This document shows positions 1-43,795 of a stretch of 64,000 nucleotides of DNA, piece by piece (position 1 is the stretch's first letter; each line of letters starts with the position of its first letter). The DNA lies in the NCBI RefSeq assembly GCF_000315625.1, contig NW_005434643.1, forward strand, positions 466,190 to 530,189. The letters run 5' to 3'. The notes under the pieces are model-generated. The model was not told where the DNA came from. It did no database searches and saw only the letters and a list, made by a program, of their open reading frames with translations. This DNA is from Guillardia theta CCMP2712. Lineage: Eukaryota; Protista; Cryptophyta. The position numbers and the translations under genes were made by a program.

Positions 1-25
1 TGATGGAGATGATGGAGATGATGGA

Positions 26-62
<37 letters not shown>

Positions 63-100
63 ATGATGGTGATGGTGATGGTAGTGATGGAGATGATGGA

Positions 101-134
<34 letters not shown>

Positions 135-165
135 ATGATGGTGGTGGTGATGATGATGATGATGA

Positions 166-202
<37 letters not shown>

Positions 203-250
203 GATGATGATGATGATGATGATGATGATGACGACGACGACGATGACAAT
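1..250. repeat. Compound trinucleotide microsatellite (GAT/GGT/GTT/GAC)n
   Basis: Directly visible; gives the spurious poly-M/L ORF 3..257. Confidence 0.97.
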
Positions 251-299
251 GATTTAAGAAAGAAGGCCCCGCATTTCTCTCACTTGTTTCATGCTGCCA

Positions 300-3200
300 C
301 TTTGTGGATGAAGCGATAGAAGCCCGACGTCCTCTCTTCTCGCCCTGCACTGACTGATGCTTGCTCAGCTGCACCTGGAGAGGATGTGGAAGGAGATCAT
401 GGACATGACACCACGACCTTCGCTGATCTTCGGGTGAGGGAGCACGTTGCGAACATATTTGAAGGATCTCACACCCTCTAGGGCCCCTCGGGAGGAAGAC
501 AAGAGGATATCAGGAGGGTCTGCGGTGACTTTGTGTGTGTATCCTTCTTGCCCGTCATTCTGAAGGTTTTTGGTGACTCAGAAGGAGGTAGAAGGAGCAA
601 GACGAGTTTCAGAGAGGTCCTCCCCACCCTCCTCTTCTCTTTTTCCTCCCTTAGATCGGCATTCTCGTCCTCATTTCACTCCTCGTCTTCGTCCTCGTCC
701 TGGTCTCCACCTCTCCTTGTCCTCCCCTTGTTTCCTTTTGGACTTGTTCATTTTTCTCGTCCTCATCCGCTTCCTCGTCCTCGTCCTCGTCCTCATGCTC
801 TTACTCGTCCTTTTTCTCGTCCCTGTCCTGGTCCTGGTCCTTGGGCTCTTCCTCGTCCTTGCCTTGGCTCTCAAATTCAGTTGCCAGGCACTCGCTTACG
901 AGTCTCACCCTGCAGGGGGTCATCCTGGTCGTTGGACATTGCAGGAGACAAGCCGCACAGCGCTAGGGTGAAGGAGGCGTCGGAGAGATTCCTTGCCATC
1001 AAGCAGTACCTAATGGCTGCAAGAAGCAATGTGGAGCAGAGAAAGATCGAGGTGCAGCGAGGTGAGTTGGATGCTCGACAGGAAGTTGTCGATGAGATTT
1101 TGTTCAAAGTTGTAGATGAAACAGAAATCCGCACAAACACCGTAGAAATCACCACAGCACCAGGGGCAACGATGATGACGACGGCAACAACATCAAACAT
1201 CACGGAGAGTGCCGAGGGGGCAACGTGCTCGGAGAGACACGATTGTGAGGCCGTGTCGAGACAAGAAATCGAGAGGATGAGAAATGAGATCATGGAGTTA
1301 AGGTGACACGTTCTGCTAAAATCAGCTACACAGGAGGATAATATTTACCAGGAGGGAACTTTCCGTCATGAAGCAACAATCCGTATCGGTGAAGGAACTC
1401 CTCTCTCCTCTCTCCTCTCTTCCTTCCTATCCCCCTTCCTTTATTCCTACTTCCTACCTCCTCCTTTCCGTCATGCGTGACCGTGTGATCTCGTTTCAGC
1501 TCCAGTCAGTCTCCCTTGCAACATCCAGCGACAACCCTACGACCATCTCCGACCCTCCGGCTGTTACCGATCGACCCCAGTTGAGCTTTCGGTATGACAG
1601 CAAGAGTCAGCCATGAGCGCTCGTGATGTGTGCGCAGAAGTCTGCCTTCAAGGATCGATCGCGATCAAGTGAGAGAGAGATGTGGAATCGCTCCCTACAG
1701 TGAGCGGAGAGCAGCTGGTGTTGTCGTTGCTGATTGATCGCTGGTTGATGTCAGGGCGATCGAGCTTGAGATTGGCAAAAGGTTGTTTGCCGACTGACGC
1801 CGAGGTGTTTTCTGCCATCAGAGCTTGTGGGCGACTCGCTCAACCTGCTCGCAGGAGCTGGAGGAAAGGAAGAGAACAACATCGCACAGATACATCAAGT
1901 GATCCGAGTCTGCTGATCGCATGCGCTGAGCCCTTGACCAGGTGTGCACAAGACGATGTCGAAGTAACACCAAGTAGTGATAGAACACTTGAATTGTTCG
2001 TTTGTGAACGCAACCATTGTTGCACCAGATACGTCGAGAAGTTTCAATCTTGCAGACAATCTCGTGGCAGACATGGTGACTTTGCAAGCTCTTGACATGC
2101 TGACGCTGATCTTTGAGGTCATCGCTGCAGGGCTGGAACTCTGTTGCCTCGCTGCTGGGACAGAAAGGTGATAACCAGAGAAAGATGATGAAGCTATGAA
2201 AGTGACGCTGAGAAGAACAATCAAACTTGACGATCAGCCGTCTCAATGTTCTTTTCATGGGTGGGCGGCCCGAGTTGGAGGTTGTGTCCTCGTGAGTTTG
2301 CCAACAGGGACCGAGGCCATTGCCTCTAGTTTTATCTGCCTGGTCCACGACGACGAGATGTCGGCTGCTCGTGAGGGGCAGCAGCCACCTTGATGCTTCC
2401 TTGGCAGGAGCGTGGAGCAGGTGGAGAGACAAGTTAGGGGGAGGAACCCTGACGTGATTGACATCAACATGAGTAATCTTCTCTTCTCAGCTGTAAGGCT
2501 TCTCTGCTTGCAGCCGTCCCTCTCAGACCTGTCCCACACTTGGTGGTGCAGGGTGTCAAGGACACCGATGGCTCAGCTTGCTTCCAAGACCAGGTTGTTG
2601 ACTTGCTCAAAGCAAAAGTTGAGAAGATCTTGTCTCTCGAGCTCGTCAAGGTGAGAAACTGTCTTTCGCTCGCCTCTCCTCTCTGTGTGAGCTTTCATTG
2701 GACAGAACAAACACGCGCAGAAATACGTCAACTTACCGCATGGGACCAAACGAATCCCTCTCGTCCGATTTCTCCTTGTAGGTTTTCCTCGGACATGGAG
2801 CCAGGTGATTTCTCATAGCGAGAAATAGAGATCAAATCTTCTCCGACCTTGTCCTCTTTTTGTTTGTCCTGCTTGCACTCGTCTCCCTCTCCCTCTTCGG
2901 TTCTTTCTTCGTTGCCCTCTCCTCCTCCTTCTCCTCCTCCTTCTCCTCCTCTTTCTCCTCCTCCTTTTCCTCCTTCTCCACCTTCTTCTCTTTCTCCCCC
3001 TCCTCTTCCTCCTCCTCTTTTTTTCCTTATCTCAACCTCCATGTCAATTCTCAGGCCCAACGCTGGGTTGAATCAGGACAATCGTTTCATACAGTCATCT
3101 TCCACGTAAGGCATTTCTTTTCCTCCACCACCTCCACCTCCACCTCCACCTCCACCTCCACCTATCTCTCCTCCTAACCTCTCTCTCTCTTCCTCCTCCT

Positions 3201-3794
3201 CCTCCCTCCACCTTCCTCCTTCCCTCCCTTCTTCCACCTCTCTCTCTCCTGGATCATCCCAAACCTCAAGATCTCTGTGTTCTCTGACAGGGAAAGTTCA
3301 TGAGCAACATGAGCAAGGGCGAAGACCTGATGAGCCAGTTGTCCAACTCGCTACAGGTCATACCCGTTGCAAATCCTCCTCCTCCCCTGACGCGCAGCAA
3401 GGAGCTGCTCCCTTTCAACTTCGACGAGCATCAGCTTGCCATGCGCCAATGTTTCCTCTACCTCTCCAAGGTATGCTCGGCGCGCGATCACTCACACTGA
3501 GCTCCTTCAAGCATTCGGCGGCTAGTAAGAACGAGCACCAGTGGCTGGACCCAAGGTCGCAGGTGACCAGAAGAGGTTTACAGCGGCTGGCCTTGCGTGA
3601 CCTTTCCAGCAGAAGTTGCTGTACGATGCCTTGGACTCGCTGCCGACGTCGATCCCCCTGTGAGAGCTGCAAGCTCTGTTGCAGTGACGAGGTTGGGTGA
3701 CAGGATGGCGCAGGAACGAGGAGTTGGATGATGCCGTCTCTTGCATGAGGCACACCGGATCGCAACTGACATCGCCGTGGTGGCGGCCCAGCTG
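300..3794 (+). CDS. Multi-exon hypothetical protein; boundaries approximate
   Basis: Protein-like frames (~930-1302, 2054-2168, 2550-2650, 3291-3470) are separated by GT..AG segments and pyrimidine-microsatellite introns; no family recognised. Confidence 0.45.
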
Positions 3795-5286
3795 AATCAT
3801 TCGAGACCTGCCGCCATGTTGGACGGCACCGTCACTACTTAGTAGTCTCGTTTCGTCGCCATCAACTATGAAATCCTTTCAACAACCCCCGGTCGCTGCT
3901 CAACTTATCGGATGAGACTCTGAGACTCAGCCTGATGATCCGACCCTCTCTTCATCACTGACTGACACTTTTTACTCAAACCCGGCTAAGCTAAACTTGA
4001 AATCAGTACGAGGACTCGGTTCGGAACGGCTGAGCAGACTCTAAGTTGGCCAAGTTGCCAACGGTTGGATCGCCGGGCGGCACTGCCACAAGTAAAGGCC
4101 ACAAGCCTGAAGTGTGAGGGCGGCCGGGAGTCACCCGGTGGCCGTACCCCCGGGGCCCGGCGCCGCCCGGCGTGAGTCACATCACGGTCACCGTCACCGT
4201 CCGATGGTCGCTCGGTCGGTCCGATCCGCTGAGGCATGACATTAAACTTTATATTAGAGGGGGCAAAGGCTCCGTGACTCGTCGATTTGACTCAAACTTG
4301 AAATCTTACGGAAGCGGAGCCGACTCAGGCTACGTTGCCCCCGCTGACATAAGCCAGCCGGTACTCAGCGGGCCGTCGGTACTCGTAGTACTGTGACACT
4401 TTAGTACTGGCAACTTACTAGCGCTGAGCAATGATCGGAGCGGTCACGGGGCCCATGACTCGCCTGCCAGTGGGCCGGGCGGCAGCCTGCGCTCAGCAGC
4501 CCAGAGTTGGGTACTGGATTCCTCTACCAACGAGGATACTACGGGGGTGATGCCGCGTGTCACTGCCTAGTAGGCTACCATGATGCCTAACTGAGGCAAG
4601 TAACTCACCCTGTCACGTTACCGCATGCATGTCGAAAAAAACCTGTGACTGTGCCTACCTAGTCGTTAGCTCCATGGCAGTAAAGGAGTGCGAACAAGAG
4701 ACTTTTGAGATCGATCGCTCTAAAACCTCAGAGCTTTCTCTCTAACTGATTTCAAATCTCTCGCACGTCGTTGAAAATCTCGAAGTGTGTAAAGCAGACT
4801 CTTATCTCAACCGATGAATAACTGAAAAATGGTGAGGATATCTTATCAAATACCCCACCTATCATTTACCACCCGAAAGTATGATGAAATTAGGGGTACT
4901 TTCACCACCCTACCTGATTAATTCCATCGATTGCCCGCCCCCTTGTCTGCCAGGATCTCACATCCACTAATCCACCTCATCCCGTTTAACCGCTTTTATC
5001 GATACGATGCGTTTTGTAAACGACCAATCATAATTATCCAAACCGATCTGACAATTGCACCAGGACCTCTTCCTATCCCAATCGCTCTTTGGATGGTTCT
5101 CCTTTGCTTCACTCCAGTGTCCCCTGTGCCACCCCTCGCACACACCCGTCCTAGCACAGTATCTGCCTCCCTCGCGATCCTCTCCTCTCCTCTCCTCTCC
5201 TACTCTCCCTCCAACGAAACGTCTTTCTTCAGCAGAATTCCATATCTCAACCTCACAAACCGATCACAGACCTCCACGTGGCCAAG

Positions 5287-31350: not shown

Positions 31351-31989
31351 AGCCATCACACGTCGAGTTTGTGATCAACTGAACCGTCTCAAATGCAGCA
31401 CATGAGAAGGCCATGTTGGGCAGCAAAAGTAGCCGCATGCCGGGGTAGTGCATGAGGGAGGATGTGAGAGAACAAGCAGGAGAAACGATCTGTGAAGGCC
31501 AAGGGGGATGGGACGTTCATCTAGAGGAGGAGGAGGCAGCTACGACAACAGCTATTTCTCTCATAGCCTACATTACCGATCCAATCCCCCACCCCACTCC
31601 TGTACCTTCCTGTGACTCTACCCCTTCTTCTATGACCCTACCCAGTCTTGAATGCTCATAACTACCCGTTCGTACCCACCCTGAGCAACACCACCATCCA
31701 GAGCTCTCTATACCCCTACATCTCCTATGAAACCACCCCGTCATCAGCGCAATGTCACTCACCTGATCGCCGGGATGGCGATGCGACACAGGCCCGTTGA
31801 CGGCAGTGGCGACACTGCGGTTTGACTGACAGTGAGGAAACTTTCACCGTTGAACTCAGTGACTCAGTGCGGCGTACCCGGCGTCCGCCGTACAGCTGCC
31901 GCTCAACGTACAGCACCGTACTGAACTTCGAACTTCGGAAGAACCATAGCGTTGCCTTTCTCAATTGACCTTGGAGCTCTAAAACGTTT

Positions 31990-32073
31990 CGCGGTGAGGG
32001 TGGTAGATTCAAATCCACGCATACCACGCCTCATGTGGGGGCGGGGTGGGTCTTCCGACCGTGTTCCGAATTC
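31990..32073 (+). repeat. 84-bp direct repeat, left copy
   Basis: cgcggtgagggtggtagattc...gttccgaattc is identical to 39278-39361. Confidence 0.95.
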
Positions 32074-32331
32074 AAATCACGAAGAGCCAAGCAGAACTTT
32101 TTCAGGGGTAGGGCATAGCGTTGACATTTTGCTTTTTGTTCTTTAGGGTACATGGTTTACCGGCGGGGGTTGTTCCTTTGGTGTAGGCGTGTAGGGGGTG
32201 GCGTGGAGACCTGTTTCAAACGATTTCAAACTGGTTTCGAAATTAAAGTTTATAAGTCGATTCTTGTTTCGGCCAAAACTATTTTAGTTTGTACTTGGGG
32301 ATTGTTAAGTATAATCTGGGCAGCGACAGCC

Positions 32332-33507
32332 ATGGCGGACCGCTCGGAGCATCGAGCATCAACAAGAAATGCAGCGCAATTGGGTGTGGCGAAAAGAAGG
32401 AAGATGGAAGCGAATGAAAATGATGCAATTGAAGACGAAATATCATCACCCCGAGATTTTCTAGACCAGCTTAGAACTCCTTTGTTCTTTTCGTCGAATG
32501 CTTTCGTCCTGAATGAACCAGAGCATACCAACAAGTGTGCACGTTACCGGCTGAGCAGCCTGGATATTGATTTTGTACTTGAGCCTACGCTTGGAGTTGT
32601 ATTTCAAGATTTGCATGGTAAAACCAGGCATGGAATCATTCGGAAGTCTTCAGAGCATTCGGTATCTGTCTACATTTTGTACACCAAGGAAATGTTACAA
32701 GAAGTCGGCCAGAATGTGCGATTCAATGCACAAACATTAAGGATGATAGGATCTTTGGAGAAATCTGAGTGTTTCCAAAGTTTGTACACAGACGAGTTCC
32801 CTTTGAAAGATATCAACGGTGTTTTTAGAGTGAATTTTCAACAAGTCTCAATGAGAGGTTCAGCAGCCTCCGTAAGTTCGGGAAGTTCGTCGTTGCCACA
32901 ATGTCTTCTTTGTGTTGGCTACGTATACTTTGATATAAACTCTAGGAATGGTCGTGAAGAATGTCATTTATCCTTCTTTGGCAAGCTCAATGTCACTTTC
33001 GACATGCTAAAAATCTTCTTCCTGAATGTCAGAAGTCAAGTAGACCCTTTTCAGCTTGCACGAGATATACACAAGCTGAGGACAGAATTGGAACGGTGGT
33101 TCAAGACACGTGGAGAACCATTTCTAAAACCTCATATCAAACGTGTTGAAGTGGACGTCGAGCACGACGAAGTCACCTCATTGCTCTTGATTCTGAAGGC
33201 CGCACTGCAGGCAATACCTGACAGCGATTATTCAGGACTTACATGCTCAGGCTTGAAAAAAGGCGAGTGTTGTTGGACGGTGTGTGAATCAATCCTCAAG
33301 CAACCTTTCATTCAAGAACAGTTTCCTGTGCCATTCAAAGAAAATCCGTACCAGTTGGAGCCAGGATCTGGTTCGCTATACGTTGAAGGCCCTGTGCAGA
33401 TCTGCTTGAAGAGAAACAGCCGTTTCAAAACTGTTCGTCTTTGCATCAAATTCAGTCGACTCGTAAGACTTTGCATGTTTGGAAGTGAAAGTTGGAAGAT
33501 TCCATGA
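32332..33507 (+). CDS. Intronless 391-aa protein with NLS and BAH-like domain; partner of the transposase
   Basis: gccATGg start; AKRRK NLS; VSVYILYTKE...SECFQSLYTDEFPLKDINGVFRVNF...CVGYVYFD matches the BAH pattern E.F.S...D..P...I.G...V. Confidence 0.75.
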   Translation: MADRSEHRASTRNAAQLGVAKRRKMEANENDAIEDEISSPRDFLDQLRTPLFFSSNAFVLNEPEHTNKCARYRLSSLDIDFVLEPTLGVVFQDLHGKTRHGIIRKSSEHSVSVYILYTKEMLQEVGQNVRFNAQTLRMIGSLEKSECFQSLYTDEFPLKDINGVFRVNFQQVSMRGSAASVSSGSSSLPQCLLCVGYVYFDINSRNGREECHLSFFGKLNVTFDMLKIFFLNVRSQVDPFQLARDIHKLRTELERWFKTRGEPFLKPHIKRVEVDVEHDEVTSLLLILKAALQAIPDSDYSGLTCSGLKKGECCWTVCESILKQPFIQEQFPVPFKENPYQLEPGSGSLYVEGPVQICLKRNSRFKTVRLCIKFSRLVRLCMFGSESWKIP

Positions 33508-33653
33508 CGAGGAATAATTTGGAGGGGATCTCATATGTTGTTCAAGCATGAGGCAGCAGAAAATCGTACCAGGGTGCCTCGCAGACATTTGACTCGCATT
33601 TATTCGGATGAATAAAACACTACAAAATTCAGTCTGACGTGTACAAGTCATGG

Positions 33654-36572
33654 TCATACGTGGCTTTGCAACAAGAGCTGACCCAGTGTAAAATGTGCTC
33701 TGCAACACTTATGGAACTTTCCCTTCTGGTCTTGCTTGAACGATGGGCCGTTTGCGCTGTTACATGGGCAGCGAAAATCGTTGGAATCTGACCCAGATGC
33801 AGATCCTTCATCCGAGGGTACCAACTTTTTTTTTGATTTTGCGATGTAGTTGTTGGCCAAAATCAATGCTCGCTGATAGGATGGACGGCCCTGCAACCTA
33901 TGACGAAGCTCGATGCAAGACATGTTGAGCAGTCCAATTTCAACTCCATATTTCTCGTAGAGATATGTGAACTGGTCTCCTACATGTCCAGACACCATTG
34001 AATGCAAGTAGAACGACTGAAGAAGTTTTGCTTGTCCAACCAAACGAATCAACCTGTACGCAAAGCTTCTAATCTGTATGGGCAAATTCTTCGCTTGATC
34101 CTGACTCATCTTCGCAAAGTGCTGCGTCTGTAATAGAAAAAGAATATCTCGTAGCTGCTCAATTGCCTCATCCCACATTTTCAATTTCTCTTCGTCTTGA
34201 CATATGATTCGAATAACTTCAGGCAATACTCGAATCAAATCATTGCATTGATCGCCATCTAGCTGTGTTCGAAATTCTTGTAACCTTTTTTCACTTAATT
34301 GAATGTGTACGCCATTCATTTCAAATACCTGGTTGATGTATGACAGCTTCCTCTTGTTGTCAGCCACAGAATGAATAAATTTGATAATCGTATTGCAAAT
34401 TCGCATCTTCAAGTGTAATGAGCAGTAGATAAAATCCATCGCGGTCAACTTCAAGGGTCGCAGTTCTTCATATTGCCTGCATATCGGGATGTATCTTTGA
34501 ACTGCTATTTTTGTCCCTGTAGGAATTAAATCATCTGGAAACGCCATGCAGTTGTCAATGACCTGCCGGTTGTGATCTGTTTTGAGCTGGTCATATTCTG
34601 CCTTACTGCAGGAATCGAAGAGTTCATGAAATCCTGGACCTTCTCTGACCAATAGATTCAAGTCGCGCATGTCCTTAGGAACAACTTGGTACTCGTTGCA
34701 AATACCATCCCAGGTAAACCTTTCTTCAGCTGAGACAGTGTGAACAGCAAAAAACTTAGCAGATTTCTTGCTATGAAGCTTCTCCTTGCAGTGAATGCAA
34801 AATTCACCATCGCTATCGTGCGGTCCACCTCGCTGCAGATAAGCGTAATGTCCCGCCAAGTCTGCTCGAAAAAGAAACTCAATGCCTATCTTGTTTGAAG
34901 CATTGCCGCCGGCTTTTGACTTGTCCGCTCCGTACATAGCCTTCCCGTCGTGAATATGCACCCCTTCTGTCTGCAAATCTTGGATCTCCTCAGTGTAATA
35001 ATGCCAAAAGTTTCTTTCTAAATTTTCACCGCTGTCCTTGTCGGGAATAATCATCAAAGTCACAAGCCTTGGTGCAAATCGCATCCTGGTTTCATGCACA
35101 CTGATCCATTCGGCAGAATTCTGCTTGGTATGGTACGGCAAAATACTGATGGTAATCTCGGTATGTTTTTTGTCACTGCTTGAGCATTTTGTCAATTTTG
35201 TACAATCGCTGTTGACGGTTACAATCAACTTGTCATACTTTCCAAGGTTCAATCGGTCTATCACTTTTTCAATAGTCCTTCGCAGCGAAGCACCGTGTGC
35301 TCCTTCCTCCGTGCAAAACACCTCCAATTCTTCATGCAGATTGTTTGTCATTGTGACGCGTGTTCGACAAATCTTCCGTACGGGAGTCGCACAATGCGTG
35401 CTAGTCCTGGGAGATAATTTCATGATTGCCACATATTTCTTCAAAGCTACATTCGAAACTGTCAAACCAATGCTGCCCTCAACTTCATCCGCCAAGAAGA
35501 GCTTTGTAATATACCTCAATGCATACTGCAAGTCTTCGTCCGACCGGAGCTCTCTCCTCAAGAATTCTTTGATTCGAGGGTTCTTCATTGTTCCTATGAC
35601 AAACTTTGCCAAGGGACTCTTGGGCTGCTTTCTCCGCCTGGGCTTGGAACCTAAATTTGAGCCAGAAGCTACCACCGTGACTGGCGGATTGCAGTGGTTT
35701 GTTCCATGATCGTGAGAGGTTGGCCCTTCATGCTCACTTGCATGTGAAGGTGAATGACTTCCACAGGTTTCAATGATCGGCATTTCTTCTGAACCACCCT
35801 CGATGCCTACATTTGAACGACACGGCGAAGTACGAGGGGGCCCACTCTCACAAGAAGCTAAAGTCGAATGATTGCAAGGAATAACTGTTGCCTGAGAAGA
35901 AGCCACCATGCCAAAATCCTGAGCAGGTAATTCCAGAGTCATCTCTTCATGTCCATCGTCATCAACCATGGCATGATCATCCATATCACTGGCAGGATCA
36001 AATTCAGGAAACAGATATGGAAAGTGTTCCAACTTCTTATCATCCCCGCTCTTTTCTATCCCAAAGGCTTGGCCAATCAGAGAAACAAAGAGTTTTCGGC
36101 AAGGAGCCATGTGATGCTGAATCTTTTCAAGGACCCTGCTCCTGAAATTCAAATCTTTGATTCCATGAAAAGACGCAGGAAAGTCTGTAATATCGGGCAT
36201 AACTTCCTGGCAGTAATCTAAAAATCGCCTTGTACTTCGAGGTATCTTATCTTCAGGTCTGCGTGCGAAGGAATTCAAATACGCAGTCACATTAGGTTGC
36301 CCCGCCTTCTTTCCAGAGGAATAAACAAAGTCTTCTTCTTTCGCCACTCGTTCTAGAGCCAACGCAGCTTCAACGCAGACCCTGAAATGGCGAAAGCGGC
36401 CGTCTTCCTTGGTGGCATCATCATGCAACTCATCACTACTTTGTCTACATGATGCCTCGCTACTACACGCACCAGGGCTTTCATCGCAAGGTATGACCGG
36501 TATGCTCACTTCTTCATCTCGTACACTTTCAAATTGAGGTCCTAGATTCCTCAAAATGTCAAGATATGACAT
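33654..36572 (-). CDS. Intronless 972-aa RAG1/Transib/Chapaev-like DDE transposase
   Basis: VNSD456; FRAD571; C592IHC595; C717SLH720; YLH857SMVSGH863; IGLLNMSCIE888. The order and approximate spacing match RAG1 D600, D708, C727/C730, H795, H937/H942, E962. Confidence 0.85.
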   Translation of the reverse strand: MSYLDILRNLGPQFESVRDEEVSIPVIPCDESPGACSSEASCRQSSDELHDDATKEDGRFRHFRVCVEAALALERVAKEEDFVYSSGKKAGQPNVTAYLNSFARRPEDKIPRSTRRFLDYCQEVMPDITDFPASFHGIKDLNFRSRVLEKIQHHMAPCRKLFVSLIGQAFGIEKSGDDKKLEHFPYLFPEFDPASDMDDHAMVDDDGHEEMTLELPAQDFGMVASSQATVIPCNHSTLASCESGPPRTSPCRSNVGIEGGSEEMPIIETCGSHSPSHASEHEGPTSHDHGTNHCNPPVTVVASGSNLGSKPRRRKQPKSPLAKFVIGTMKNPRIKEFLRRELRSDEDLQYALRYITKLFLADEVEGSIGLTVSNVALKKYVAIMKLSPRTSTHCATPVRKICRTRVTMTNNLHEELEVFCTEEGAHGASLRRTIEKVIDRLNLGKYDKLIVTVNSDCTKLTKCSSSDKKHTEITISILPYHTKQNSAEWISVHETRMRFAPRLVTLMIIPDKDSGENLERNFWHYYTEEIQDLQTEGVHIHDGKAMYGADKSKAGGNASNKIGIEFLFRADLAGHYAYLQRGGPHDSDGEFCIHCKEKLHSKKSAKFFAVHTVSAEERFTWDGICNEYQVVPKDMRDLNLLVREGPGFHELFDSCSKAEYDQLKTDHNRQVIDNCMAFPDDLIPTGTKIAVQRYIPICRQYEELRPLKLTAMDFIYCSLHLKMRICNTIIKFIHSVADNKRKLSYINQVFEMNGVHIQLSEKRLQEFRTQLDGDQCNDLIRVLPEVIRIICQDEEKLKMWDEAIEQLRDILFLLQTQHFAKMSQDQAKNLPIQIRSFAYRLIRLVGQAKLLQSFYLHSMVSGHVGDQFTYLYEKYGVEIGLLNMSCIELRHRLQGRPSYQRALILANNYIAKSKKKLVPSDEGSASGSDSNDFRCPCNSANGPSFKQDQKGKFHKCCRAHFTLGQLLLQSHV

Positions 36573-37504
36573 GTTATGCTATCCTAGTTTTCAAATTTAT
36601 AGATTGTGGATTTGAACACAGGAGCGTGTCAGAGGCACGCCGCGGATTCTGTGTTCTGCTTTTATAGTGGGGGCGGGGGGAACACCAAGGACCCAGATCA
36701 GGGGGTAGGGTAGTGATGAATTCGAACAGCAGTACCACATTGACTTCGATTTGTACCCAGTCCAAAGTCTCCGATACAAAATATAGTAGCATATGTATAC
36801 TTAAAATTACATCCATTAACAACGTTTGAATGATTTAGGTATAGATTTCCAAATTTCAAATTACCCTACCCCTTATTACTAGATTGTTTTGGTAAATATG
36901 GGGGTATAGTGTTTCAGAATTTCAAACTGGTTGCCACTTTCAGGATTATTACTCGAATGATGTTTTCTTACAAGATATTTTAGACTGTACTCTGTCATGT
37001 TTGATTATAATATACCATATTGTTATACACACCCATACAGCATGACCATAGCTATGCAAACCAACAGCGTGCCCCCTTGCACGGGGCACGTCGCACCGCT
37101 CTGTACTGTCCTAACCATGGCTCGCAAACAGCGAGTGTGCAGAACAGATGTTCACCGAACATACTCAGAGGAAATTCCTGATGTGTAGAGGTGATGAGCC
37201 TGGAGGAGTGCTTCGTACAGTTCGTGAATCTCACGAAAAATCATTTGGTAAGCGAAGAGCATCAACAATACAAGTGAAAACCACCATCACGAGGATACAT
37301 TGCAATCGAAACCGAGGCGTGATATACCCTAAGCTAACTGCGATGCATGACAGGGAAACTGAGCTGGAGTAGATGGATGGAGGTTACACTGAAGACAACA
37401 GGGAATTATCATCAGATGGTGACTGGATTGTTCAAAAGCTGTACGGTCACCTGTGAGCTCAAGAACACATGTCTGCACACCTATGTCTGATAGGTTCGCA
37501 AGCA

Positions 37505-39072
37505 ATACAGTGCATTTTAACCGTGAGCAGCTCGATTGCTTGAAACAATGATGATCAAGCAAGTCCCGTGGTCCTGATCGGGATTATTCATCCAAGTTTT
37601 CAGAGATGTGTTAGAACGATGAAACATTTTGCAAATCACCAAGGCCTGTGTCATTTCATCACATGATGCATCATGTAAATGTTACTGGTGTGACTCGCAT
37701 CAGAATGTGTTCACCAACGATTTGTTGCCAAGCAGATGATGTCAGAGCAAACATGAGCACTTTGGAAGATGCTGATATTCCAGGCCGTAGAGCATTTATG
37801 ATGTGGCCACATGTCACATGCTTCTTGATTAACACAGATGCACATCCGACAGGCAAAAGATGGAACGTCGCCAGGATTACAGGGAGGTCGGTTGTACTTG
37901 TACCCTGATTGCAACTCTTCTAATAAAGATGTGTTAACCTGGATGTGCAATTCTGTTTATTGATTCACAGCGTTTGTATGTGTAGCGTTTGCGATTCATT
38001 TACAATCGTCGAGTGCTTGCTCTGTATAACAAGGAAATCCACTGTAAAGCCATGCGACAAGAAGTCTACAGTTGCACAGTAGCATCATGCATTGTGAACT
38101 GACAAAACCAGACAGGATTGATTCGAAGAACATCTCATTTATTGATACGCACAAAGGCATCATCTGCACATTGTTTCATTTCTGACTAGGTTTCTGTGCC
38201 ATCGAAAGCGTTGTGGAAATATCATGACAGATGAAAAATCTGAAGCGCAGAAAACTCATCCAACGTCCTGAAACATGGAAATGCAGCTATCAATGCACTT
38301 GATCATGGATATAGTTATTCATGATCAACAGCAGATCTCTACAGTCATCTATGCGGGCAGGAAAAGTCATGCTCTGTGCAAACGTATCTTCACGGTGAAC
38401 GGTTGAGTGCATGTAACCCTTGCCTCCACAATGATAGAAAAGTAAAGTGCATGAATCCTGACCGTAACACTAGAGGAATTGAAAGTGAGTGATGACATGA
38501 GGAAACATTTCCAAACAGAAAAGTCACATAAAGAAAAGCTGGATCTAAAGTTCTCACAAATCATGCATTTGAGCGCAACGTGCAACCCACGGCAATTTGA
38601 ACGGAAGGTCGATCAGAGTTGCTTCTGTTCAATGGTGTACCCATTCTCAGTTCCTTACCTGATCATAAAGATTTCATCTTGTCTTCGAAGCATATTTGCA
38701 AGTACATCCGCGGATTGCTTGAACCAAGGGCACATATTCCATTACTGCATGGATGATTCAAACATTGGCCCAACCTGCAGAGTTGAGAAAGAAGCTCGAT
38801 CATCTCTTACAGGGATGATATGAGATCTTCATCTCATTCCTATCTCAGTTGGGTTGGATTCGAAGTCTCTCAATGTCAAGGTTCATCCTCGCGAGTCAGG
38901 AAGGCACCATTTCATCGCTTCTTGCTCGTCCAGGGAGAGAGGGCTTGGGGAATGAGAAAAGGGGGCTACCCCCTACCCCCTATTTCAGAGTTTCAAACTC
39001 TTTCAAAGGTGGGTAGTTGAGGGTGCTCCATGTCCACCCCACCCCCCAACCATAGTCAAACGGAGGGGTTCT
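37505..39072 (-). repeat. Left arm of a ~1.55-kb diverged inverted repeat
   Basis: Its reverse complement aligns by eye with 39693-41228 throughout, with substitutions and small indels. Confidence 0.9.
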
Positions 39073-39277
39073 GAGAGGTCGAGGTTCCGACCAGTTCGGC
39101 CCTCGTTTTGTACCATGTAAACGCTTCAATTTTAAGTTAGTACCACAGATACTTCTAAAATTCGTACTTTTACATTGGTTTGGCGTGGTGAGGTGTCCAA
39201 GCAACCAAAATTCAAATCACCCTACCCCTCATTTGCCCTGCGCAGCAACGATTTTTCTGAGAGCTAGTACCCTCCCC

Positions 39278-39361
39278 CGCGGTGAGGGTGGTAGATTCAA
39301 ATCCACGCATACCACGCCTCATGTGGGGGCGGGGTGGGTCTTCCGACCGTGTTCCGAATTC
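39278..39361 (+). repeat. 84-bp direct repeat, right copy
   Basis: Identical to 31990-32073; lies in the spacer of the inverted repeat. Confidence 0.95.
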
Positions 39362-39692
39362 CTATGAGCGCCCGGCCGGAAAAGCAACGCTATGGGTCAC
39401 GGCCGCCCGGAGAGATCAGGCCCCCGGCCCGAACCATGTGACTTTGGTACTCTTTTGGTACCATTCGGGGTTCTCCCCTATGTATTGTACACATCCGGTA
39501 CAAGTATAACCCCACTCCCATGAAAAATCTTCAAGCATGCTGGTGAATTGCTTCATCCCTTGAACCTGGGGCCTGTCCGATCAAATCATATGGGCATACA
39601 TAAGAAAACTGCAAGCCTGTATGTGGGGTCGGCCTGAACCATCTTGAATTCAAATGAGAGGGGGTGATGGAGGCGGGATTCCTTCGGATCCG

Positions 39693-41228
39693 AGAACCCC
39701 TCCGTTTGAGTCATTTTGGGTGGTGGGGTGGGTATGGAGCACCCTCAACTACCCACCTTTGAAACAGTTTGAAACTCTACAATAGGGGGTGGGGGTAACA
39801 CCCATTTCTCATTCCCCAAGCCCCCTCTCCCTGGACGAGCAAGAAGCGATGAAATGGTGCCTTCCTGACTCACCAGGATGAACTTTGATATTGAGAGACT
39901 TCGAATCCAACCCAACTGAGATAGAAATGAGATGAAGATCTCATATCATACCTGTAAGAGATGATCGAGCTTCTTTCTCAACTCTACAGGTTGGGCCAAG
40001 GTTTGAATCATCCATCCTGCAATGGAATATGCACCCTAGGTTCAAACAATCCGCGGGTGTACTTGCAAATATTCTTCGAAGACAAGATGAAATTTTTATG
40101 ATCAGGTAAGGAATTGATAATCGATACACCATTGAACAGAATCAACTCTGATTGACCCTTTATTCAAATTGCCGTAGGTTGCACGTTGCGCTCAAATGCA
40201 TGACTGTGATTTGTGAGAAATTTGTATCCAGCTGTACCTTGAGCGACTTTTCTGTCTAGATATGTGTTCTCATGTCATCACTTGCTTTCAATTCTTCTAG
40301 TCTTACAGTCAGGATTCATGCACTTCACCTTTCTATGGAGGCAAGTCTTACATGCACTCAACCGTTCAACGATACATGAAGAGACGTTTGCACAGAAGAT
40401 GACTGTTCCTGCCCGCATAGATGACTGTAGAGAACCGTTGTTGATCATGAATCACTATATCTATGATCATATTTCGATGATTTTTCCGTTTCGCTTCAAA
40501 TTTTTCCTCTGTCATGATATTTTCACAAGGATTTCGATTGCACAGAAACCTAGTCAGAAATGAAGCAATGTGCAGATAATGCCTTTGCGTATCAATAAAT
40601 GAGACGTTCATCGGATCAATCCTGTCTTGGTGTCGCAATGCTACCGTGCAACTGTAGTGTTCTTGTCGCATGGCTCTACAGAAGAGTGCCTTGTTCAACA
40701 GAGCAAGCACTCGATGATTGCAATCGAGTCGCAAACACTGTGAATCAACAAACAGAATTGCACATTCAGGTTATCATATCTTTATTAGAAGAGTTACAAT
40801 CAGGGTACAAGCACAACCGACCTCCCTGTAATCCTGAAGACGTTCCATCTTTTGCCTGGCGAGGGTGTATCTGCGTTAACCAAGAAGCATGTGACATGTG
40901 GCCACATCTTGAATGCTCTACGGTCAGGAATATCAACATCTTCAAAACGGCTCTCTTGTTTGCTGTGACATCAACTGCTTGGTAGCGGCTCATCCGATGA
41001 ACAGAATCTGATGCAAGTTCACACCAGTAATATTTACATGATGCATCAGTCAGTGTGATGAAATTGGTGATTTGCAAAATGTTTCATCGTTCCAACACAT
41101 CCTTAAGAATTGGATGAAGAATCCTTCACGAACCACGGGACTTACTTGTCATCATTCGATTGTACTGAGGATCATCTTTGTTTCATGCATCGAGCTGCTC
41201 CGACCGTGACTGCTAAAATGCGCTGTAT
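39693..41228 (+). repeat. Right arm of the inverted repeat (possible decayed spliced gene)
   Basis: Matches the left arm; has GT..AG segments, and in-frame stops at positions that differ between the arms. Confidence 0.9.
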
Positions 41229-41848
41229 CTGTTCATTTAGAACTTTCCGTTGAGCTTTTCCTTCAGTTTTGCATGTTCTTCCATGCAGTGAGATGACCAT
41301 GTCAATATTTTGCCTAGACCTGATCGACTCCCGAGTCCTGAACTTATCTTTGTTTGTGCCCATTTCATGTCACAACCTTTTCACATCGGGACAGTTCTGC
41401 GATGTGTCGAAAACCCCTTCGTATGCAGCCATTGTCTCGAGAGTTTTGTATGCTGGGCGGCTTACTGGTACGACTCCTGGATACCGGTTTGTAATATTGG
41501 TTGGGCACTTGCCAAAGTCTTCACCCGTTCATCAATCTCATACAAGTTGCCAAAGGCTGCAAATCATTCCAACCTGCATCAAGAACACGTCATTTGGATC
41601 TCTTCCCGTGATAATTTCGATGAAAAAAAGAGATAATGCTCACCTGACTTGTCTTGCTCTGTCAAACGCTGCACATCCTCATATCTGTACGGCTTCGCAG
41701 AGTTCACAGTGGCGGGAAACTTTCAACATTGATATTTTTTATTTTGATATTTGATATCGTATTGGCGATGCATCATGATTGAGCTTCGGAGGGCCAGCCA
41801 CGCCTGTGAAGGCCATAATGGCCATCAAAGCTGACTTGCGATGGCATG

Positions 41849-42616
41849 GGAGCGTGACACACAAAGATTTCAGGCCGCAGGAGCGTGACACACAATGATT
41901 TCAGGCTGAACACCCCCTCAATTTTCAAGTTGTTCCATGTAGGTTGGACTTGCTCCAAACTATATGGAACAACTTGAAAATTGGAGGAGCGTGACACACA
42001 ATGATTTCAGGCCGCAGGAGCGTGACACACAATGATTTCAGGCCGAACACCTCCTCAATTTTCAAGTTGTTCCATGTAGGTTGGACTTGCTCCAAACTAT
42101 ATGGAACAACTTGAAACTTGGACTCCGGGAGCGTGACACACAATGATTTCAGGCTGAACACCCCCTCAATTTTCAAGTTGTTCCATGTAGGTTGGACTTG
42201 CTCCAAACTATATGGAACAACTTGAAAATTGGAGGAGCGTGACACACAATGATTTCAGGCCGCAGGAGCGTGACACACAACTTTTTTCAAGTTGTTCCAT
42301 GTAGGTTGGACTTGCTCCAAACTATATGGAACAACTTGAAACTTGGACTCCGGGAGCGTGACACACAATGATTTCAGGCCGAACACCTCCTCAATTTTCA
42401 AGTTGTTCCATGTAGGTTGGACTTGCTCCAAACTATATGGAACAACTTGAAAATTGGAGGAGCGTGAGGAGCGTGACACACAATGATTTCAGGCCGAACA
42501 CCTCCTCAATTTTCAAGTTGTTCCATGTAGGTTGGACTTGCTCCAAACTATATGGAACAACTTGAAACTTGGACTCCGGGAGCGTGACACACAAAGATTT
42601 CAGGCCGAACACCCCC
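41849..42616. repeat. Modular tandem array with six ~65-nt palindromic hairpins
   Basis: Module A ggagcgtgacacacaatgatttcaggc alternates with module B caattttcaagttgttccat-gtaggttgga-cttgc-tccaaactat-atggaacaacttgaaaattg; two half-copies resume at 43608-43677. Confidence 0.95.
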
Positions 42617-43607
42617 GGCTAATATTGGAATCAATTCCTGACTCCTAGAGTCTGTGCACAGATGAATGACTAGTAGAACAGCTCAACAGCTGACTGATAA
42701 GCCAAAGACCAAGACTCACAGATGGCCTTGCGCACGAAGACACCAATGACTTTCACAGCCAACCAAACACCTCAGATAACTCAGATCAACTTCCCAACAA
42801 TCTCCAGCACTTTATTCCCAACACTCGTAGCAGCAAGACCAACCAAACAGCTTCCCTTCACACACCACCGCCTTACTTCCACCACTGTACGAGTGCTGCC
42901 TCTTCGACAGCCGGCGCCTCTTGATTCCTCCGGCGCCGCCTCAGCTTCAAGTCCCCAGGAGTCCAACCAACCGGATCTTCTAAGTCACAGACTAAGCTCC
43001 AGCCCACTAGGCTAGTAGCTTGGACCTGCAGGCTTCACTTGGTTCACAACCTGATTAGACGCATCCCTTGAACTTATCGCGTCTGAAAGAACTTCTGAGA
43101 GGTTTGTCAGAACCTGAGTTCTTACAGCTAATCGAATCAACCTCCACCTCACTGGCCAGACCGACGAGTCTATTTAACCCGATCCACCAAACACTATCTC
43201 TCAGTACACCTGAGATCCTTACCCCAACCTTATTCACCTCAACGATACACAGCTGTGCAGCCTGGTCTCTAACACCTTCACTGATGATGATAGAACTCTC
43301 AGAAGAACCACACAACACCACCAACACTTCCTTTATTCACAGCAGTCACCTCCCCTTCAGTCGGCCTTGCAACCGTGACTCCAGTGACGGCAAGTACAAT
43401 GCACAGCGCCCTGGACACGTGTCCTCCTCACCCCCTTTTCACTGCCAGACCCTCAGGCTCGTCGATTCCTTAATTCCACTGAGACCTATGTCAAAGCCCC
43501 GTGACTTCCATCTGAGTCGCTGACTCTGTGAGCTTCGTCTACCGATGAGACGCAATACCCTGAACTTCTCGCCGTCTCCAAGAACTTATCGGCGGCGAGT
43601 TCTTACA
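42617..43607. mobile_element. ~1-kb insertion into the hairpin array; diverged head-to-tail dimer
   Basis: The array breaks at acaccccc and resumes at acaccccc. Two ~490-bp units each start gctaat..gaatcaa and end gagttcttaca. Confidence 0.6.
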
Positions 43608-43795
43608 CCCCCTCAATTTTCAAGTTGTTCCATGTAGATTTCAGGCCGAACACCCCCTCAATTTTCAAGTTGTTCCACAGTGAAATATTTTTTGTGGCCC
43701 TGAATCATTTCGCCGGGGCGCACTGAGTGTTCCAAGTTCCGGCTGAAGCCTGGCACTGCCGCATGCGGCCATGTTATGTTAAGTTATGTTGACCT

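What the first reader, a model, noticed from the sequence alone, without database searches (positions are those of the whole stretch)
32332..36572. RAG-like two-gene system: RAG1/Transib-type transposase tail-to-tail with a BAH-like chromatin reader
Seen: two long, intact, intronless, AT-richer ORFs in an intron-dense genome, convergent with 146 bp between their stops. The 972-aa ORF has D456, D571, C592/C595, CxLH720, H857/H863 and E888, the order and near spacing of the RAG1 core catalytic triad and zinc ligands. Known: ProtoRAG/RAGL transposons carry convergent RAG1L and RAG2L genes, and vertebrate RAG2 is kelch plus a PHD histone reader. Here the partner shows no kelch repeats but has an NLS and a BAH-like signature; BAH domains read nucleosomes and methyl-lysines. 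Inference: an independently assembled RAG-like element in a protist, with a BAH accessory protein that targets integration or counters silencing. This is the best candidate for a new system in the window.
Basis: partly seen in the sequence, partly recalled or inferred. Interest (0 to 1): 0.92.

Follow-up and report, generated by a model that had tools for sequence, protein, structure and literature searches.

The report
RAG1-fold transposon with BAH partner gene
This stretch of the alga Guillardia theta holds a recently active "cut-and-paste" jumping gene whose enzyme has the same fold as the RAG1/Transib recombinase of our immune system. The enzyme gene is always paired with a second gene for a chromatin-reader-like (BAH-fold) protein, a pairing I did not find described in the paper searches I ran.

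Summary

- **The element.** The pair is the coding part of a 7,281-bp transposon (window 32114-39394) in Guillardia theta. Its termini are CATAGCGTTG...CAACGCTATG.
- **The 972-aa protein.** It has no Pfam or PDB sequence hit. Its model (pLDDT 88.5) matches only HzTransib, RAG1 and BbRAGL at the top (Z 19.6-17). D456, D571, C592, C595, H857, H863 and E888 are invariant or nearly so.
- **The partner.** It has a BAH fold (Z 10.5) and no kelch propeller.
- **Linkage and selection.** The pair stays convergent in at least 10 diverged lineages of this genome. Both genes are under purifying selection and both are transcribed.
- **Copies.** Thirteen 2.6-kb non-coding copies are about 98.6% alike.
- **What does not fit Transib.** Termini start CAT, not CAC. 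This lineage makes no target-site duplication (5 exact cases). No profile similarity was found.

It is best filed as a new lineage of the wider CACTA-Mirage-Chapaev-Transib clade. Seven of 16 copies lie in one 332-bp satellite, which fits BAH-guided targeting, but that is untested. Four unchecked first-reader notes flagged RAG1/Transib-like transposases on other pieces of this genome.

The parts
32114..39394 (.). Whole autonomous element (7,281 bp)
   Evidence: Homology with the near-identical copies on contigs C72 and C340 starts at 32114 and ends at 39394. About 30 genomic sites carry the same right terminus and 26 match the left end.
32114..32123 (+). Left terminal inverted repeat, CATAGCGTTG
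   Evidence: Identical first bases in all full and non-autonomous copies.
39385..39394 (-). Right terminal inverted repeat (reverse complement CATAGCGTTG)
32332..33507 (+). Partner gene P2 (391 aa): basic N-terminus, BAH-fold domain, unassigned C-terminal half
   Evidence: ORF. RNA-derived contigs start at 32318-32335. Paralogue alignments. dN/dS 0.19 between the C285 and C154 copies.
32509..32982 (+). BAH-fold domain of P2 (about residues 60-217)
   Evidence: Model pLDDT 75.9. Foldseek PDB top 50 hits are all BAH, E 1e-5. VIA-align Z 10.5 to the ORC1b BAH, the top 19 rows are all BAH, then a drop to Z 4.6. ESM Atlas BAH clusters, TM 0.69 by target.
33508..33653 (.). 146-bp spacer between the two stops; the 3' ends of the two transcripts meet or overlap here
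   Evidence: Contigs 33217-33598 (+) and 33583-36428 (-). Stranded raw RNA reads switch strand at about 33575.
33654..36572 (-). Transposase gene TP (972 aa)
   Evidence: ORF. 52 matches in the same genome. dN/dS 0.31 between the C285 and C154 copies.
33657..35621 (-). RAG1/Transib-fold catalytic core (residues 318-972) with D456, D571, E888 and zinc ligands C592, C595, H857, H863
   Evidence: Model pLDDT 88.5, pTM 0.86. Fold searches. Residue invariance.
36573..39277 (.). Non-coding right arm; its stretch 36900-39275 is kept (about 85% identity) in the 2.64-kb non-autonomous copies
   Evidence: Non-autonomous copies have no shared ORF of 70 aa or more. Plus-strand RNA is seen over 37062-37900.
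39278..39361 (+). 84-bp segment of a dispersed repeat that replaces an 87-bp subterminal segment found in the other copies
   Evidence: at least 19 identical or near-identical copies genome-wide. The same 84 bp lies at 31990-32073, 40 bp outside the left end.

Best explanation
Window 32114-39394 is an autonomous, recently active cut-and-paste DNA transposon of the cryptophyte Guillardia theta.

Shown:
- It has 10-bp terminal inverted repeats (5'-CATAGCGTTG) and two convergent, intronless, transcribed genes.
- The 972-aa gene encodes a DDE transposase whose core (residues 318-972) has the RAG1/HzTransib architecture. The invariant D456/D571/E888 sit at the places expected for an RNase H fold. 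An invariant C592/C595 + H857/H863 set matches the RAG1 zinc site.
- The 391-aa gene encodes a protein with a BAH-fold domain.
- The pair is conserved, always tail-to-tail, in at least 10 lineages of the genome that are only 24-55% identical. Both genes are under purifying selection.
- Non-coding 2.4-2.6-kb derivatives with the same ends have multiplied recently.
- This lineage and its sister insert without any target-site duplication, and often into one 332-bp satellite.

Inferred:
- The transposase binds the CAT...ATG ends and excises the element by the nick-hairpin chemistry of RAG/Transib. It then joins both ends to directly opposed target phosphates (a blunt, 0-bp stagger).
- The BAH protein is a required accessory subunit that ties the transposase to nucleosomes of a particular chromatin state, probably satellite heterochromatin. 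This would parallel the way the RAG2 PHD finger guides RAG1.

Classification: a new, sequence-remote lineage of the CACTA-Mirage-Chapaev-Transib (CMCT) clade. Its nearest solved structures are Transib and RAG1. It is not a member of Transib proper.
For: Organism and linkage:
- Paralogues are named GUITHDRAFT.
- TP and P2 matches are adjacent and convergent on C31, C72, C340, C17, C56, C47, C285, C154, C9, C242, C19 (two places), C282, C307 (two places), C389, C276, C319, C100, C105 and C296.

Ends and copies:
- Ends were defined from three 98-100% identical copies.
- 13 non-autonomous copies are 96.7-99.9% alike and share no ORF.

Target-site duplication:
- 5 of 7 satellite insertions have flanks that are exactly contiguous in the satellite unit.
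- None of the 6 other two-ended non-autonomous copies has a direct repeat. The sister lineage has none beyond a chance-level 2-bp match (CT) at one copy.

Transposase fold:
- pLDDT 88.5.
- Foldseek top 49 hits are RAG1, HzTransib or BbRAGL, E down to 8.6e-9; the next hit is Hermes at E 0.025.
- Z is 19.6 for HzTransib (413 of 480 residues aligned), 19.2 for RAG1 and 17.8 for BbRAGL. P element scores 11.3 and Hermes 7.4.
- RAG1 clusters score 0.95 with 181-183 shared features in the language-model search.
- By DSSP, D456 lies in a strand, D571 directly follows a strand, and E888 lies in a long helix.
- Invariance across 26 sequences down to 17% identity.

BAH fold.

Selection: dN/dS is 0.19 for P2 and 0.31 for TP. 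Between lineages pS is saturated while pN is 0.24-0.42.

Expression:
- Stranded raw RNA reads lie at both 3' ends in the expected orientation, and contigs are colinear.
- Both proteins have homologues in the Hanusia phi EukProt set, which I take (from my own knowledge) to be transcriptome-derived.

Satellite bias: 7 of 16 copies with both flanks available are in the satellite. At least 484 units (about 0.2% of the assembly) were counted, which is a lower bound.
Against: - No sequence-profile link to any transposase family, so homology rests on predicted structure and language-model features.
- I could not obtain model coordinates, so the three acidic residues were not shown to cluster in 3D.
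- Predicted CACTA (Transposase_21) and Chapaev (DUF1280) transposases match about as well as RAG1 in the ESM Atlas (TM 0.55-0.62). Placement within the CMCT clade is therefore open.
- Absence of a TSD is atypical for DDE transposases. It could reflect another integration route.
- Two related lineages show 3-bp flanking repeats (TCA, GTG), one copy each.
- The satellite bias may come from selection against insertions elsewhere rather than from targeting.
- No evidence was obtained that the two proteins bind each other.
- The BAH domain has no Pfam BAH hit, and its ligand pocket was not examined.
Confidence: 0.72

Rival explanations
1. It is a true member of the Transib/RAGL family. On this view the BAH protein is a replacement for RAG2, and the odd ends and missing TSD are lineage quirks.
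For: The best solved-structure matches are HzTransib and RAG1. RAG1 clusters rank above DUF1280 and Transposase_21 in the language-model search: 0.95 with 181-183 shared features, against 0.94 with 168 and 0.89 with 127. The gene pair is convergent, as in ProtoRAG.
Against: There is no HMM similarity to RAG1 or HzTransib, even with a 26-sequence profile. Termini are CAT, not the CAC heptamer. TSD is 0 bp (or 3 bp in two lineages) rather than 5 bp. No CMC-type structure is in the PDB, so a 'best PDB hit' cannot discriminate. ESM Atlas models of CACTA and Chapaev transposases fit equally well.
Confidence: 0.15
2. It belongs to the Chapaev/CACTA (CMC) side of the clade. The likeness to RAG1 is only the fold shared by the whole clade.
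For: Sub-threshold DUF1280 (Chapaev) hits occur in 4 of 26 distant relatives, best E 0.0076. A DUF1280-labelled cluster is the first ESM Atlas fold match, TM 0.66 by target. Possible 3-bp TSDs in lineages E and F, and CA..TG termini, fit EnSpm-like elements (PMC12730594).
Against: No DUF1280 match anywhere in the G. theta genome. No Transposase_21 hit. Termini are not CACTA. Language-model scores for Transposase_21 are clearly lower.
Confidence: 0.2
3. The BAH protein does not target integration. It either protects the element from silencing or regulates or inhibits transposition. The satellite enrichment would then be survivorship: insertions elsewhere are purged.
For: Other CMCT and KDZ transposons carry epigenetic modifiers (TET/JBP) thought to counter silencing (PMC12730594). 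TE build-up in satellites is common without targeting. No TP-P2 interface was obtained.
Against: The non-autonomous copies are very young (median 98.6% identity), yet 7 of 16 copies already sit in a repeat that makes up roughly 0.2-1% of the assembly. That leaves little time for purging. Solved BAH domains that match best are nucleosome or methyl-lysine readers.
Confidence: 0.25
4. The TSD-less junctions are not made by the transposase. Excised blunt-ended elements would be captured at chromosome breaks by end joining, or copies would spread by recombination or gene conversion.
For: One satellite insertion has a 25-bp target deletion and one is rearranged. The C56 copy lost 38 bp of its right end and carries a 32-bp copy of its left flank. 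The window copy has an 84-bp segment swapped in near its right end.
Against: Five independent insertions at different satellite positions are exact to the base, with complete termini and no loss or filler. Sloppy end joining would not be expected to give that.
Confidence: 0.15
5. A domesticated host gene pair rather than a mobile element.
For: Both ORFs are intact, expressed and under purifying selection.
Against: There are multiple near-identical copies at unrelated sites, with defined inverted-repeat ends. Non-autonomous derivatives share those ends. There are many decayed copies.
Confidence: 0.03

Closest known systems
Transib transposons (HzTransib, PDB 6PQX)
   Same: Best solved-structure match: Z 19.6, with 413 of 480 residues aligned. 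Same domain order. DDE triad plus Cys2/His2 zinc site. Short inverted-repeat ends starting with CA. Intronless single-exon transposase gene.
   Different: No sequence-profile similarity. Ends are CAT... rather than the CAC heptamer. 0-bp rather than 5-bp target duplication. About 300 extra N-terminal residues and a larger insertion domain. Carries a second gene, which Transib elements do not (PMC10462144).
RAG1-RAG2 and RAG-like transposons (ProtoRAG; AanRAGL of the alga Aureococcus, PMC9435367)
   Same: RAG1-fold enzyme (Z 17-19). A second gene inside the inverted repeats, in convergent orientation as in ProtoRAG. The partner carries a chromatin-reader-type domain, functionally comparable to the RAG2 PHD finger.
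   Different: The partner is a BAH-fold protein, not a six-bladed kelch propeller with a PHD finger. No 5-bp TSD. No RSS-like heptamer. No detectable sequence homology. So the pairing most likely arose independently.
CMCT clade of DNA transposons (EnSpm/CACTA, Mirage, Chapaev, Transib, Plavaka, ESTA, Lanisha; Kojima 2025, PMC12730594)
   Same: [quoted passage not shown] 5'-CA...TG-3' termini. Accessory genes with epigenetic roles are known in some lineages (TET/JBP).
   Different: His spacing is 5, not 3-4. TSD is 0 bp in this lineage, against 2-5 bp. No hit to Transposase_21, DUF1258 or (in G. theta) DUF1280. The accessory is a BAH-fold protein. No paper in the searched library paired 'Transib' or 'Chapaev' with BAH.
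Spy elements (PIF/Harbinger-related DDE transposons without TSD; cited in PMC12730594)
   Same: DDE-type cut-and-paste elements that insert without duplicating the target.
   Different: Unrelated transposase superfamily. From my own knowledge, Spy elements insert at a specific AAA|TTT site; no target motif is seen here.
Chromatin-tethered retroelements (chromodomain Gypsy elements such as MAGGY, cited in the Grau-Bove et al. preprint 10.1101/2021.11.30.470311; Ty5-Sir4 from my own knowledge)
   Same: A mobile element carries or uses a chromatin-reading module, and its insertions concentrate in heterochromatin-like repeats.
   Different: That preprint mentions BAH only in host ASH1L proteins, not among its examples of transposon captures.

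Membership tests
Transib / RAG1-like transposases | RAG1-core fold (pre-RNase H, RNase H, ZnC2/ZnH2 insertion, C-terminal domain) | tested here: met
   Model pLDDT 88.5. Foldseek top 49 hits all RAG1, HzTransib or BbRAGL. Z 19.6-17, with 413-437 residues aligned.
Transib / RAG1-like transposases | DDE triad on the RNase H fold | tested here: met
   D456, D571 and E888 are invariant in 9 sequences. D571 is invariant and E888 nearly invariant in 26 sequences. By DSSP, D456 is inside a strand (core 131-142), D571 is just after a strand (core 243-252) and E888 is in a helix (core 568-598). 3D clustering could not be measured because no coordinates were given.
Transib / RAG1-like transposases | Cys2 + His2 zinc site flanking the insertion domain | tested here: met
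   C592 and C595 are invariant, and H857 and H863 invariant or nearly so. The His spacing is 5 residues. The motif is shared by the whole CMCT clade (PMC12730594), so it is not specific.
Transib / RAG1-like transposases | Detectable sequence-profile homology to RAG1 or Transib | tested here: not met
   No Pfam hit at E up to 10 for any of 26 members. No PDB hit with single-sequence or profile searches. The newer Pfam RAG1 sub-domain models are not in the local library.
Transib / RAG1-like transposases | Inverted repeats beginning with the CAC(A/G)GTG-like heptamer | tested here: not met
   Termini are CATAGCG, CATGCCG, CATTCTG and CATATTG in five lineages. Only CA is shared.
Transib / RAG1-like transposases | 5-bp target-site duplication | tested here: not met
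   0 bp in 5 exact satellite insertions. None in the 6 other two-ended non-autonomous copies. None in the sister lineage beyond a chance-level 2-bp match at one copy. Possible 3 bp in two other lineages, n=1 each.
RAG-like (RAG1L+RAG2L) transposons | Partner is a RAG2-like kelch beta-propeller (with or without a PHD finger) | tested here: not met
   The P2 model is mixed alpha/beta, with a BAH barrel and no propeller.
RAG-like (RAG1L+RAG2L) transposons | Two genes, convergent, inside one pair of inverted repeats | tested here: met
CMCT clade (EnSpm-Mirage-Chapaev-Transib and allies) | [quoted passage not shown] | tested here: met
   C592-x2-C595 and H857-x5-H863 (one residue longer than the stated range) lie between D571 and E888. 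All termini read CAT...ATG. Definition from PMC12730594.
CMCT clade (EnSpm-Mirage-Chapaev-Transib and allies) | 2-5 bp target-site duplication | tested here: inconclusive
   0 bp in lineage A and in 4 of 5 lineage-B copies, with a chance-level 2-bp match (CT) at one. 3-bp repeats flank the single full copies of lineages E and F.
Chapaev (Pfam DUF1280) and CACTA/EnSpm (Pfam Transposase_21) | Match to the family HMM | tested here: not met
   DUF1280: nothing in the whole G. theta genome. Only sub-threshold hits (15 bits against a cut-off of 25) in distant environmental relatives. Transposase_21: no hit.
BAH domain proteins | BAH beta-barrel fold | tested here: met
   Residues about 60-217. Foldseek top 50 hits all BAH. 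Z 10.5-6.4 for 19 BAH entries, then 4.6. Atlas BAH clusters.
BAH domain proteins | Match to Pfam BAH (PF01426) | tested here: not met
   No hit at E up to 10 in any of 11 members.
BAH domain proteins | Nucleosome or methyl-lysine binding (aromatic cage) | not testable with these tools
   No residue-level superposition was available. Conserved aromatics (Y/F114, Y117, Y152, F200) exist, but their placement is unknown.

The most novel reading that the evidence does not exclude
A second, independent invention of the RAG principle. In this reading a RAG1-fold transposase works only together with a separately encoded chromatin reader. It would tether the enzyme to marked nucleosomes of satellite heterochromatin and direct blunt integration without target-site duplication. 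The family would be a new superfamily-level branch, with many unannotated relatives in environmental protists.
Probability: 0.3. Interest if true: 0.85.

Novelty: new variant of a known kind. Interest (0 to 1): 0.68.

Why it matters
- **RAG evolution.** RAG1-RAG2 is the textbook case of a transposase tamed for immunity, and why RAG1 acquired a chromatin-reading partner is still debated. This is a natural, apparently still mobile element in a distant alga. A RAG1-fold enzyme has been kept together with a different reader-type protein across deep divergence. That lets the 'partner = chromatin guide' idea be tested outside animals.
- **Integration chemistry.** It is a DDE element of this clade that integrates without a target-site duplication. 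This bears on how strand-transfer stagger is set.
- **A hidden family.** The enzyme belongs to a large family (97 representatives in the exhaustive search; at least 67 clusters around one environmental member). Neither Pfam nor PDB sequence searches recognise it, so transposon annotation pipelines probably miss it.
- **A possible tool.** The young non-autonomous copies suggest a usable transposon tool for cryptophytes.

Tried and rejected
- **Sequence searches of both proteins.** Pfam, PDB phmmer, and PDB hmmsearch with 9-, 10- and 26-sequence profiles gave nothing relevant.
- **RAG2-like kelch partner.** Rejected by the P2 model.
- **Longer P2 ORF from the ATG at 32152.** Not supported; RNA-derived contigs begin at about 32318.
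- **The 84-bp direct repeats (31990-32073 and 39278-39361) as TSD or LTR.** Rejected.
  - The left copy lies 40 bp outside the element.
  - The right copy lies inside it, replacing an 87-bp segment that the other copies have.
  - The 84 bp is a dispersed repeat with at least 19 near-identical copies.
- **tRNA and Rfam scans of 31500-41500.** Nothing found.
- **Complex prediction of TP core with P2.** The tool returned 'no answer' (score 0.00), which is evidence neither for nor against binding.
- **P2 profile against six-frame translations around distant TP homologues.** No hit in Cymbomonas L069 or the metagenome contig L070, so linkage outside cryptophytes is unknown.
- **Neighbours on the metagenome contig.** No Pfam hits.
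- **Language-model search of the P2 C-terminal half.** No lead (0.76).
- **Whole-genome DUF1280 search.** Nothing found. PF26100 is not in the local library.
- **Fetching more genome.** I could not define both ends of lineages C and D, or get more copies of E and F. I did not try to get round this limit.
- **Literature.** The searches Transib+Guillardia, Transib+BAH domain, and Chapaev+bromo-adjacent homology each returned 0 papers. The supplements of PMC9435367 do not mention Guillardia, cryptophytes, Hanusia or Cymbomonas.

Full report
**1. Observation.**
The 972-aa ORF is at 33654-36572 on the minus strand. The 391-aa reading starts at the Met at 32332 and ends at 33507 on the plus strand. 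The stops are 146 bp apart.
- GC is 0.42-0.46 across 32-43 kb, against about 0.5-0.6 around it.

**2. Organism, copies and linkage.**
- The window is contig C31 of an 87.1-Mb, 669-contig genome. Paralogues in public databases are annotated as Guillardia theta CCMP2712 hypothetical proteins.
- Word-indexed searches found only a Hanusia phi protein for the large ORF. For the partner they found a Hanusia phi protein plus one unnamed 98%-identical entry. Hanusia phi is another cryptophyte.
- Within the genome the large ORF has 52 matches and the small ORF 78.
- Wherever a full or partial transposase copy lies, a partner copy lies next to it, tail to tail. This holds for C31, C72, C340, C17, C56, C47, C285, C154, C9, C242, C19 (two places) and C282. 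It also holds for the more distant group on C307 (two places), C389, C276, C319, C100, C105 and C296. These lineages are only 24-55% identical to the window's proteins.
- Between the two 95%-identical copies on C285 and C154, dN/dS is 0.19 for the partner and 0.31 for the transposase. Between lineages, synonymous sites are saturated (pS 0.74-0.84) while pN is 0.24-0.42. The partner is at least as constrained as the enzyme.

**3. The element.**
- *Ends.* Comparison with the near-identical copies on C72 and C340 sets the ends at 32114 and 39394. The termini are 10-bp inverted repeats, CATAGCGTTG...CAACGCTATG.
- *Non-autonomous copies.* The right-end 18-mer occurs at 30 sites, against 1 for the reversed control. 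Thirteen copies of 2.5-2.76 kb carry both ends plus the right 2.4-kb non-coding arm of the full element. They share no ORF of 70 aa or more and are 96.7-99.9% identical to each other, median 98.6%. These are non-autonomous derivatives that amplified recently.
- *Satellite bias.* Seven of the 16 copies with both flanks available sit in one 332-bp satellite. At least 484 units of it were counted, about 0.2% of the assembly, which is a lower bound.
- *No target-site duplication.* Because the satellite gives the uninterrupted target, the junctions can be read exactly. In five of the seven cases the two flanks are contiguous to the base. One further case has a 25-bp target deletion and one is rearranged. 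None of the 6 other two-ended non-autonomous copies shows a flanking repeat.
- *Sister lineage (52% identity).* It ends in CATGCCGTT. It has no duplication in its non-autonomous 2.4-kb copies. The full C17 copy shows only a chance-level 2-bp match, CT.
- *Other lineages.* Their ends read CATTCTG... or CATATTG... The single complete copies of two of them are flanked by TCA/TCA and GTG/GTG. This could be a 3-bp duplication, but with n=1 each.

**4. The large protein.**
- *No sequence hit.* Pfam and PDB sequence searches found nothing.
- *Wider family.* An exhaustive profile search found 97 representatives. They are cryptophyte proteins, proteins of the green alga Cymbomonas, and many 1,000-1,800-aa proteins from metagenomes. 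None has a meaningful Pfam annotation.
- *Invariant residues.* In a 26-sequence alignment reaching 17% identity, the invariant positions are D571, C592, C595, R699, C717, H720, R724 and one glycine. H857, H863 and E888 are nearly invariant.
- *Model.* AlphaFold2 on this alignment gave a confident model of residues 318-972: pLDDT 88.5, pTM 0.86.
- *Foldseek against the PDB.* The 49 best chains were only RAG1, HzTransib and amphioxus BbRAGL, with E down to 8.6e-9. The next hit was Hermes at E 0.025.
- *VIA-align.* Z is 19.6 for HzTransib in its hairpin-forming complex (413 of 480 residues, rmsd 3.9). Z is 19.2-17 for RAG1 and 17.8 for BbRAGL. It falls to 11.3 for P element transposase, 8.7 for ISCth4 and 7.4 for Hermes.
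- *Residue placement.* In the model D456 lies in a beta strand, D571 directly follows a strand and E888 lies in a long helix. That is the expected layout for an RNase H-type active site. I could not obtain coordinates, so 3D clustering is inferred, not measured.
- *Language-model search.* RAG1 clusters come first (0.95, 181-183 shared features). Next come clusters labelled DUF1280 (0.94, 168). Transposase_21 is lower (0.89, 127).

**5. Classification caveat.**
- In the ESM Atlas of predicted structures the model matches several groups about equally, with TM 0.55-0.62 by query. These are DUF1280-labelled, RAG1_RNase_H-labelled, Transposase_21-labelled and vertebrate RAG1 clusters.
- DUF1280 corresponds to Chapaev transposases and Transposase_21 to CACTA/EnSpm (PMC3985635).
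- The element meets the motif criterion (with His spacing 5) and the termini criterion. It fails the Transib hallmarks: profile similarity, CAC heptamer and 5-bp duplication.
- I file it as a new, remote lineage of the CMCT clade whose nearest solved structures are Transib and RAG1.

**6. The partner.**
- The model (pLDDT 75.9) has a disordered basic N-terminus, a beta barrel at about residues 60-217, and a mixed alpha/beta C-terminal half.
- The barrel matches BAH domains only. The Foldseek top 50 are Sir3, ORC1, SHL/EBS, ASI1, AIPP3, BAHCC1, PBRM1, DNMT1 and similar, with E 1e-5.
- VIA-align against 48,161 representatives gives Z 10.5 for the ORC1b BAH. Nineteen BAH entries come before a drop to Z 4.6. 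ESM Atlas BAH clusters also come first.
- There is no kelch propeller and no Pfam BAH hit. The C-terminal half remains unassigned.

**7. Expression.**
- *Contigs.* Contigs from several studies that are probably RNA-seq cover 32318-36456 only. They are colinear with the genome and stop short of the element's non-coding parts. In one run the partner and transposase contigs have different depths and overlap at 33583-33598.
- *Raw reads.* A run on record as RNA-seq has reads on the plus strand at 33379-33575 and on the minus strand at 33576-33969. These are the 3' ends of both genes in the expected orientation.
- *Limit.* Reads cannot be assigned among the three near-identical copies. All contigs differ from the window at 34785.

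**8. Mechanism.**
- *Shown:* a mobile element with inverted-repeat ends, a RAG1-fold DDE enzyme, a conserved BAH-fold accessory gene, recent mobilisation of non-coding derivatives, insertion without target-site duplication, and satellite enrichment.
- *Inferred:* nick-hairpin excision as in RAG and Transib, and concerted integration with a 0-bp stagger. Spy elements of another superfamily are a precedent. The BAH protein would act as a chromatin tether that biases integration toward satellite heterochromatin, analogous to the RAG2 PHD finger or to chromodomain retroelements.
- *Rivals:* anti-silencing or regulatory roles for the partner; survivorship instead of targeting; and capture by end joining instead of blunt strand transfer. 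They are listed in the Rival explanations section with the tests that would separate them.

**9. Novelty.**
- RAG-like transposons with a kelch RAG2L are known in one protist, Aureococcus. Transib is known in bacteria, fungi, plants and animals (PMC9435367, PMC10462144).
- I found no paper linking Transib or Chapaev with Guillardia or with a BAH accessory. The Tao et al. supplements do not list cryptophytes.
- A survey preprint on chromatin-domain capture by transposons highlights Chromo and PHD domains and mentions BAH only in host proteins (10.1101/2021.11.30.470311).
- Repbase could not be checked.
- Four unchecked first-reader notes of this scan flagged RAG1/Transib-like transposases on other pieces of this genome, one of them paired with a non-kelch partner.

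Noticed in passing
window 39395-39429; L042 (C340) 1-4155: A 332-bp satellite (at least 484 units, on many small contigs) is the preferred landing place of these elements. A 34-35-bp piece of it lies directly right of the window's element.
   Followed up: partly
window 31990-32073 and 39278-39361: An 84-bp sequence with at least 19 near-identical copies genome-wide lies 40 bp left of the element. It also lies inside the element's right end, where it replaces an 87-bp segment present in all other copies. How it got there is unexplained (gene conversion or repair filler?).
   Followed up: partly
window 39689-41200: A partial, inverted, 84-85% identical copy of the element's right arm lacks a terminus. 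With 37600-39072 it forms the long inverted repeat seen in this region.
   Followed up: partly
window 37062-37900 (+): The non-coding right arm is transcribed on the plus strand. Raw reads carry fixed differences at 37109 and 37116 and unmatched 5' extensions at 37073, so they probably come from non-autonomous copies.
   Followed up: partly
window 34449-34805 (TP residues about 590-708): The insertion between the CxxC and the C..H motif weakly resembles LysM (Z 4.8 to OsCEBiP). One distant relative has a sub-threshold Pfam LysM hit, and UniRef calls the Cymbomonas homologue 'LysM domain-containing'.
   Followed up: partly
L044/L047 (C56:416082-421020): The sister-lineage copy on C56 lacks the last 38 bp of its right end. 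In their place it carries a 32-bp duplicate of its own left flank, which marks an aberrant transposition or repair event.
   Followed up: partly
G000: C12:578970, C113:93086, C169:60635, C75:295563, C41:498175, C103:95944 and about 10 more: A further multi-copy family of 300-411-aa ORFs is 23-26% identical to the partner's residues 14-275. No transposase match from my two transposase searches lies next to them. They may be partners of a still more distant transposase, or solo BAH-like genes.
   Followed up: no
P0032-P0199 (metagenome proteins); L070: A large unannotated family of 1,000-1,800-aa environmental proteins shares the transposase core. At least 67 clusters surround one member alone, some with more than 100 member sequences. 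Their hosts and neighbours are unknown.
   Followed up: partly
L027, L032, L033 (partner-side ends of lineages C, E, F): A conserved subterminal motif, about TGGGAAAnnGGGG, lies 45-55 bp inside the partner-side end. It is not seen in the first 70 bp of the transposase-side end. This is a bipartite, asymmetric end layout.
   Followed up: no
window 41849-43682: An array of 65-nt hairpin-forming repeats lies just beyond the inverted partial copy. It is the subject of another first-reader note and was not studied here.
   Followed up: no
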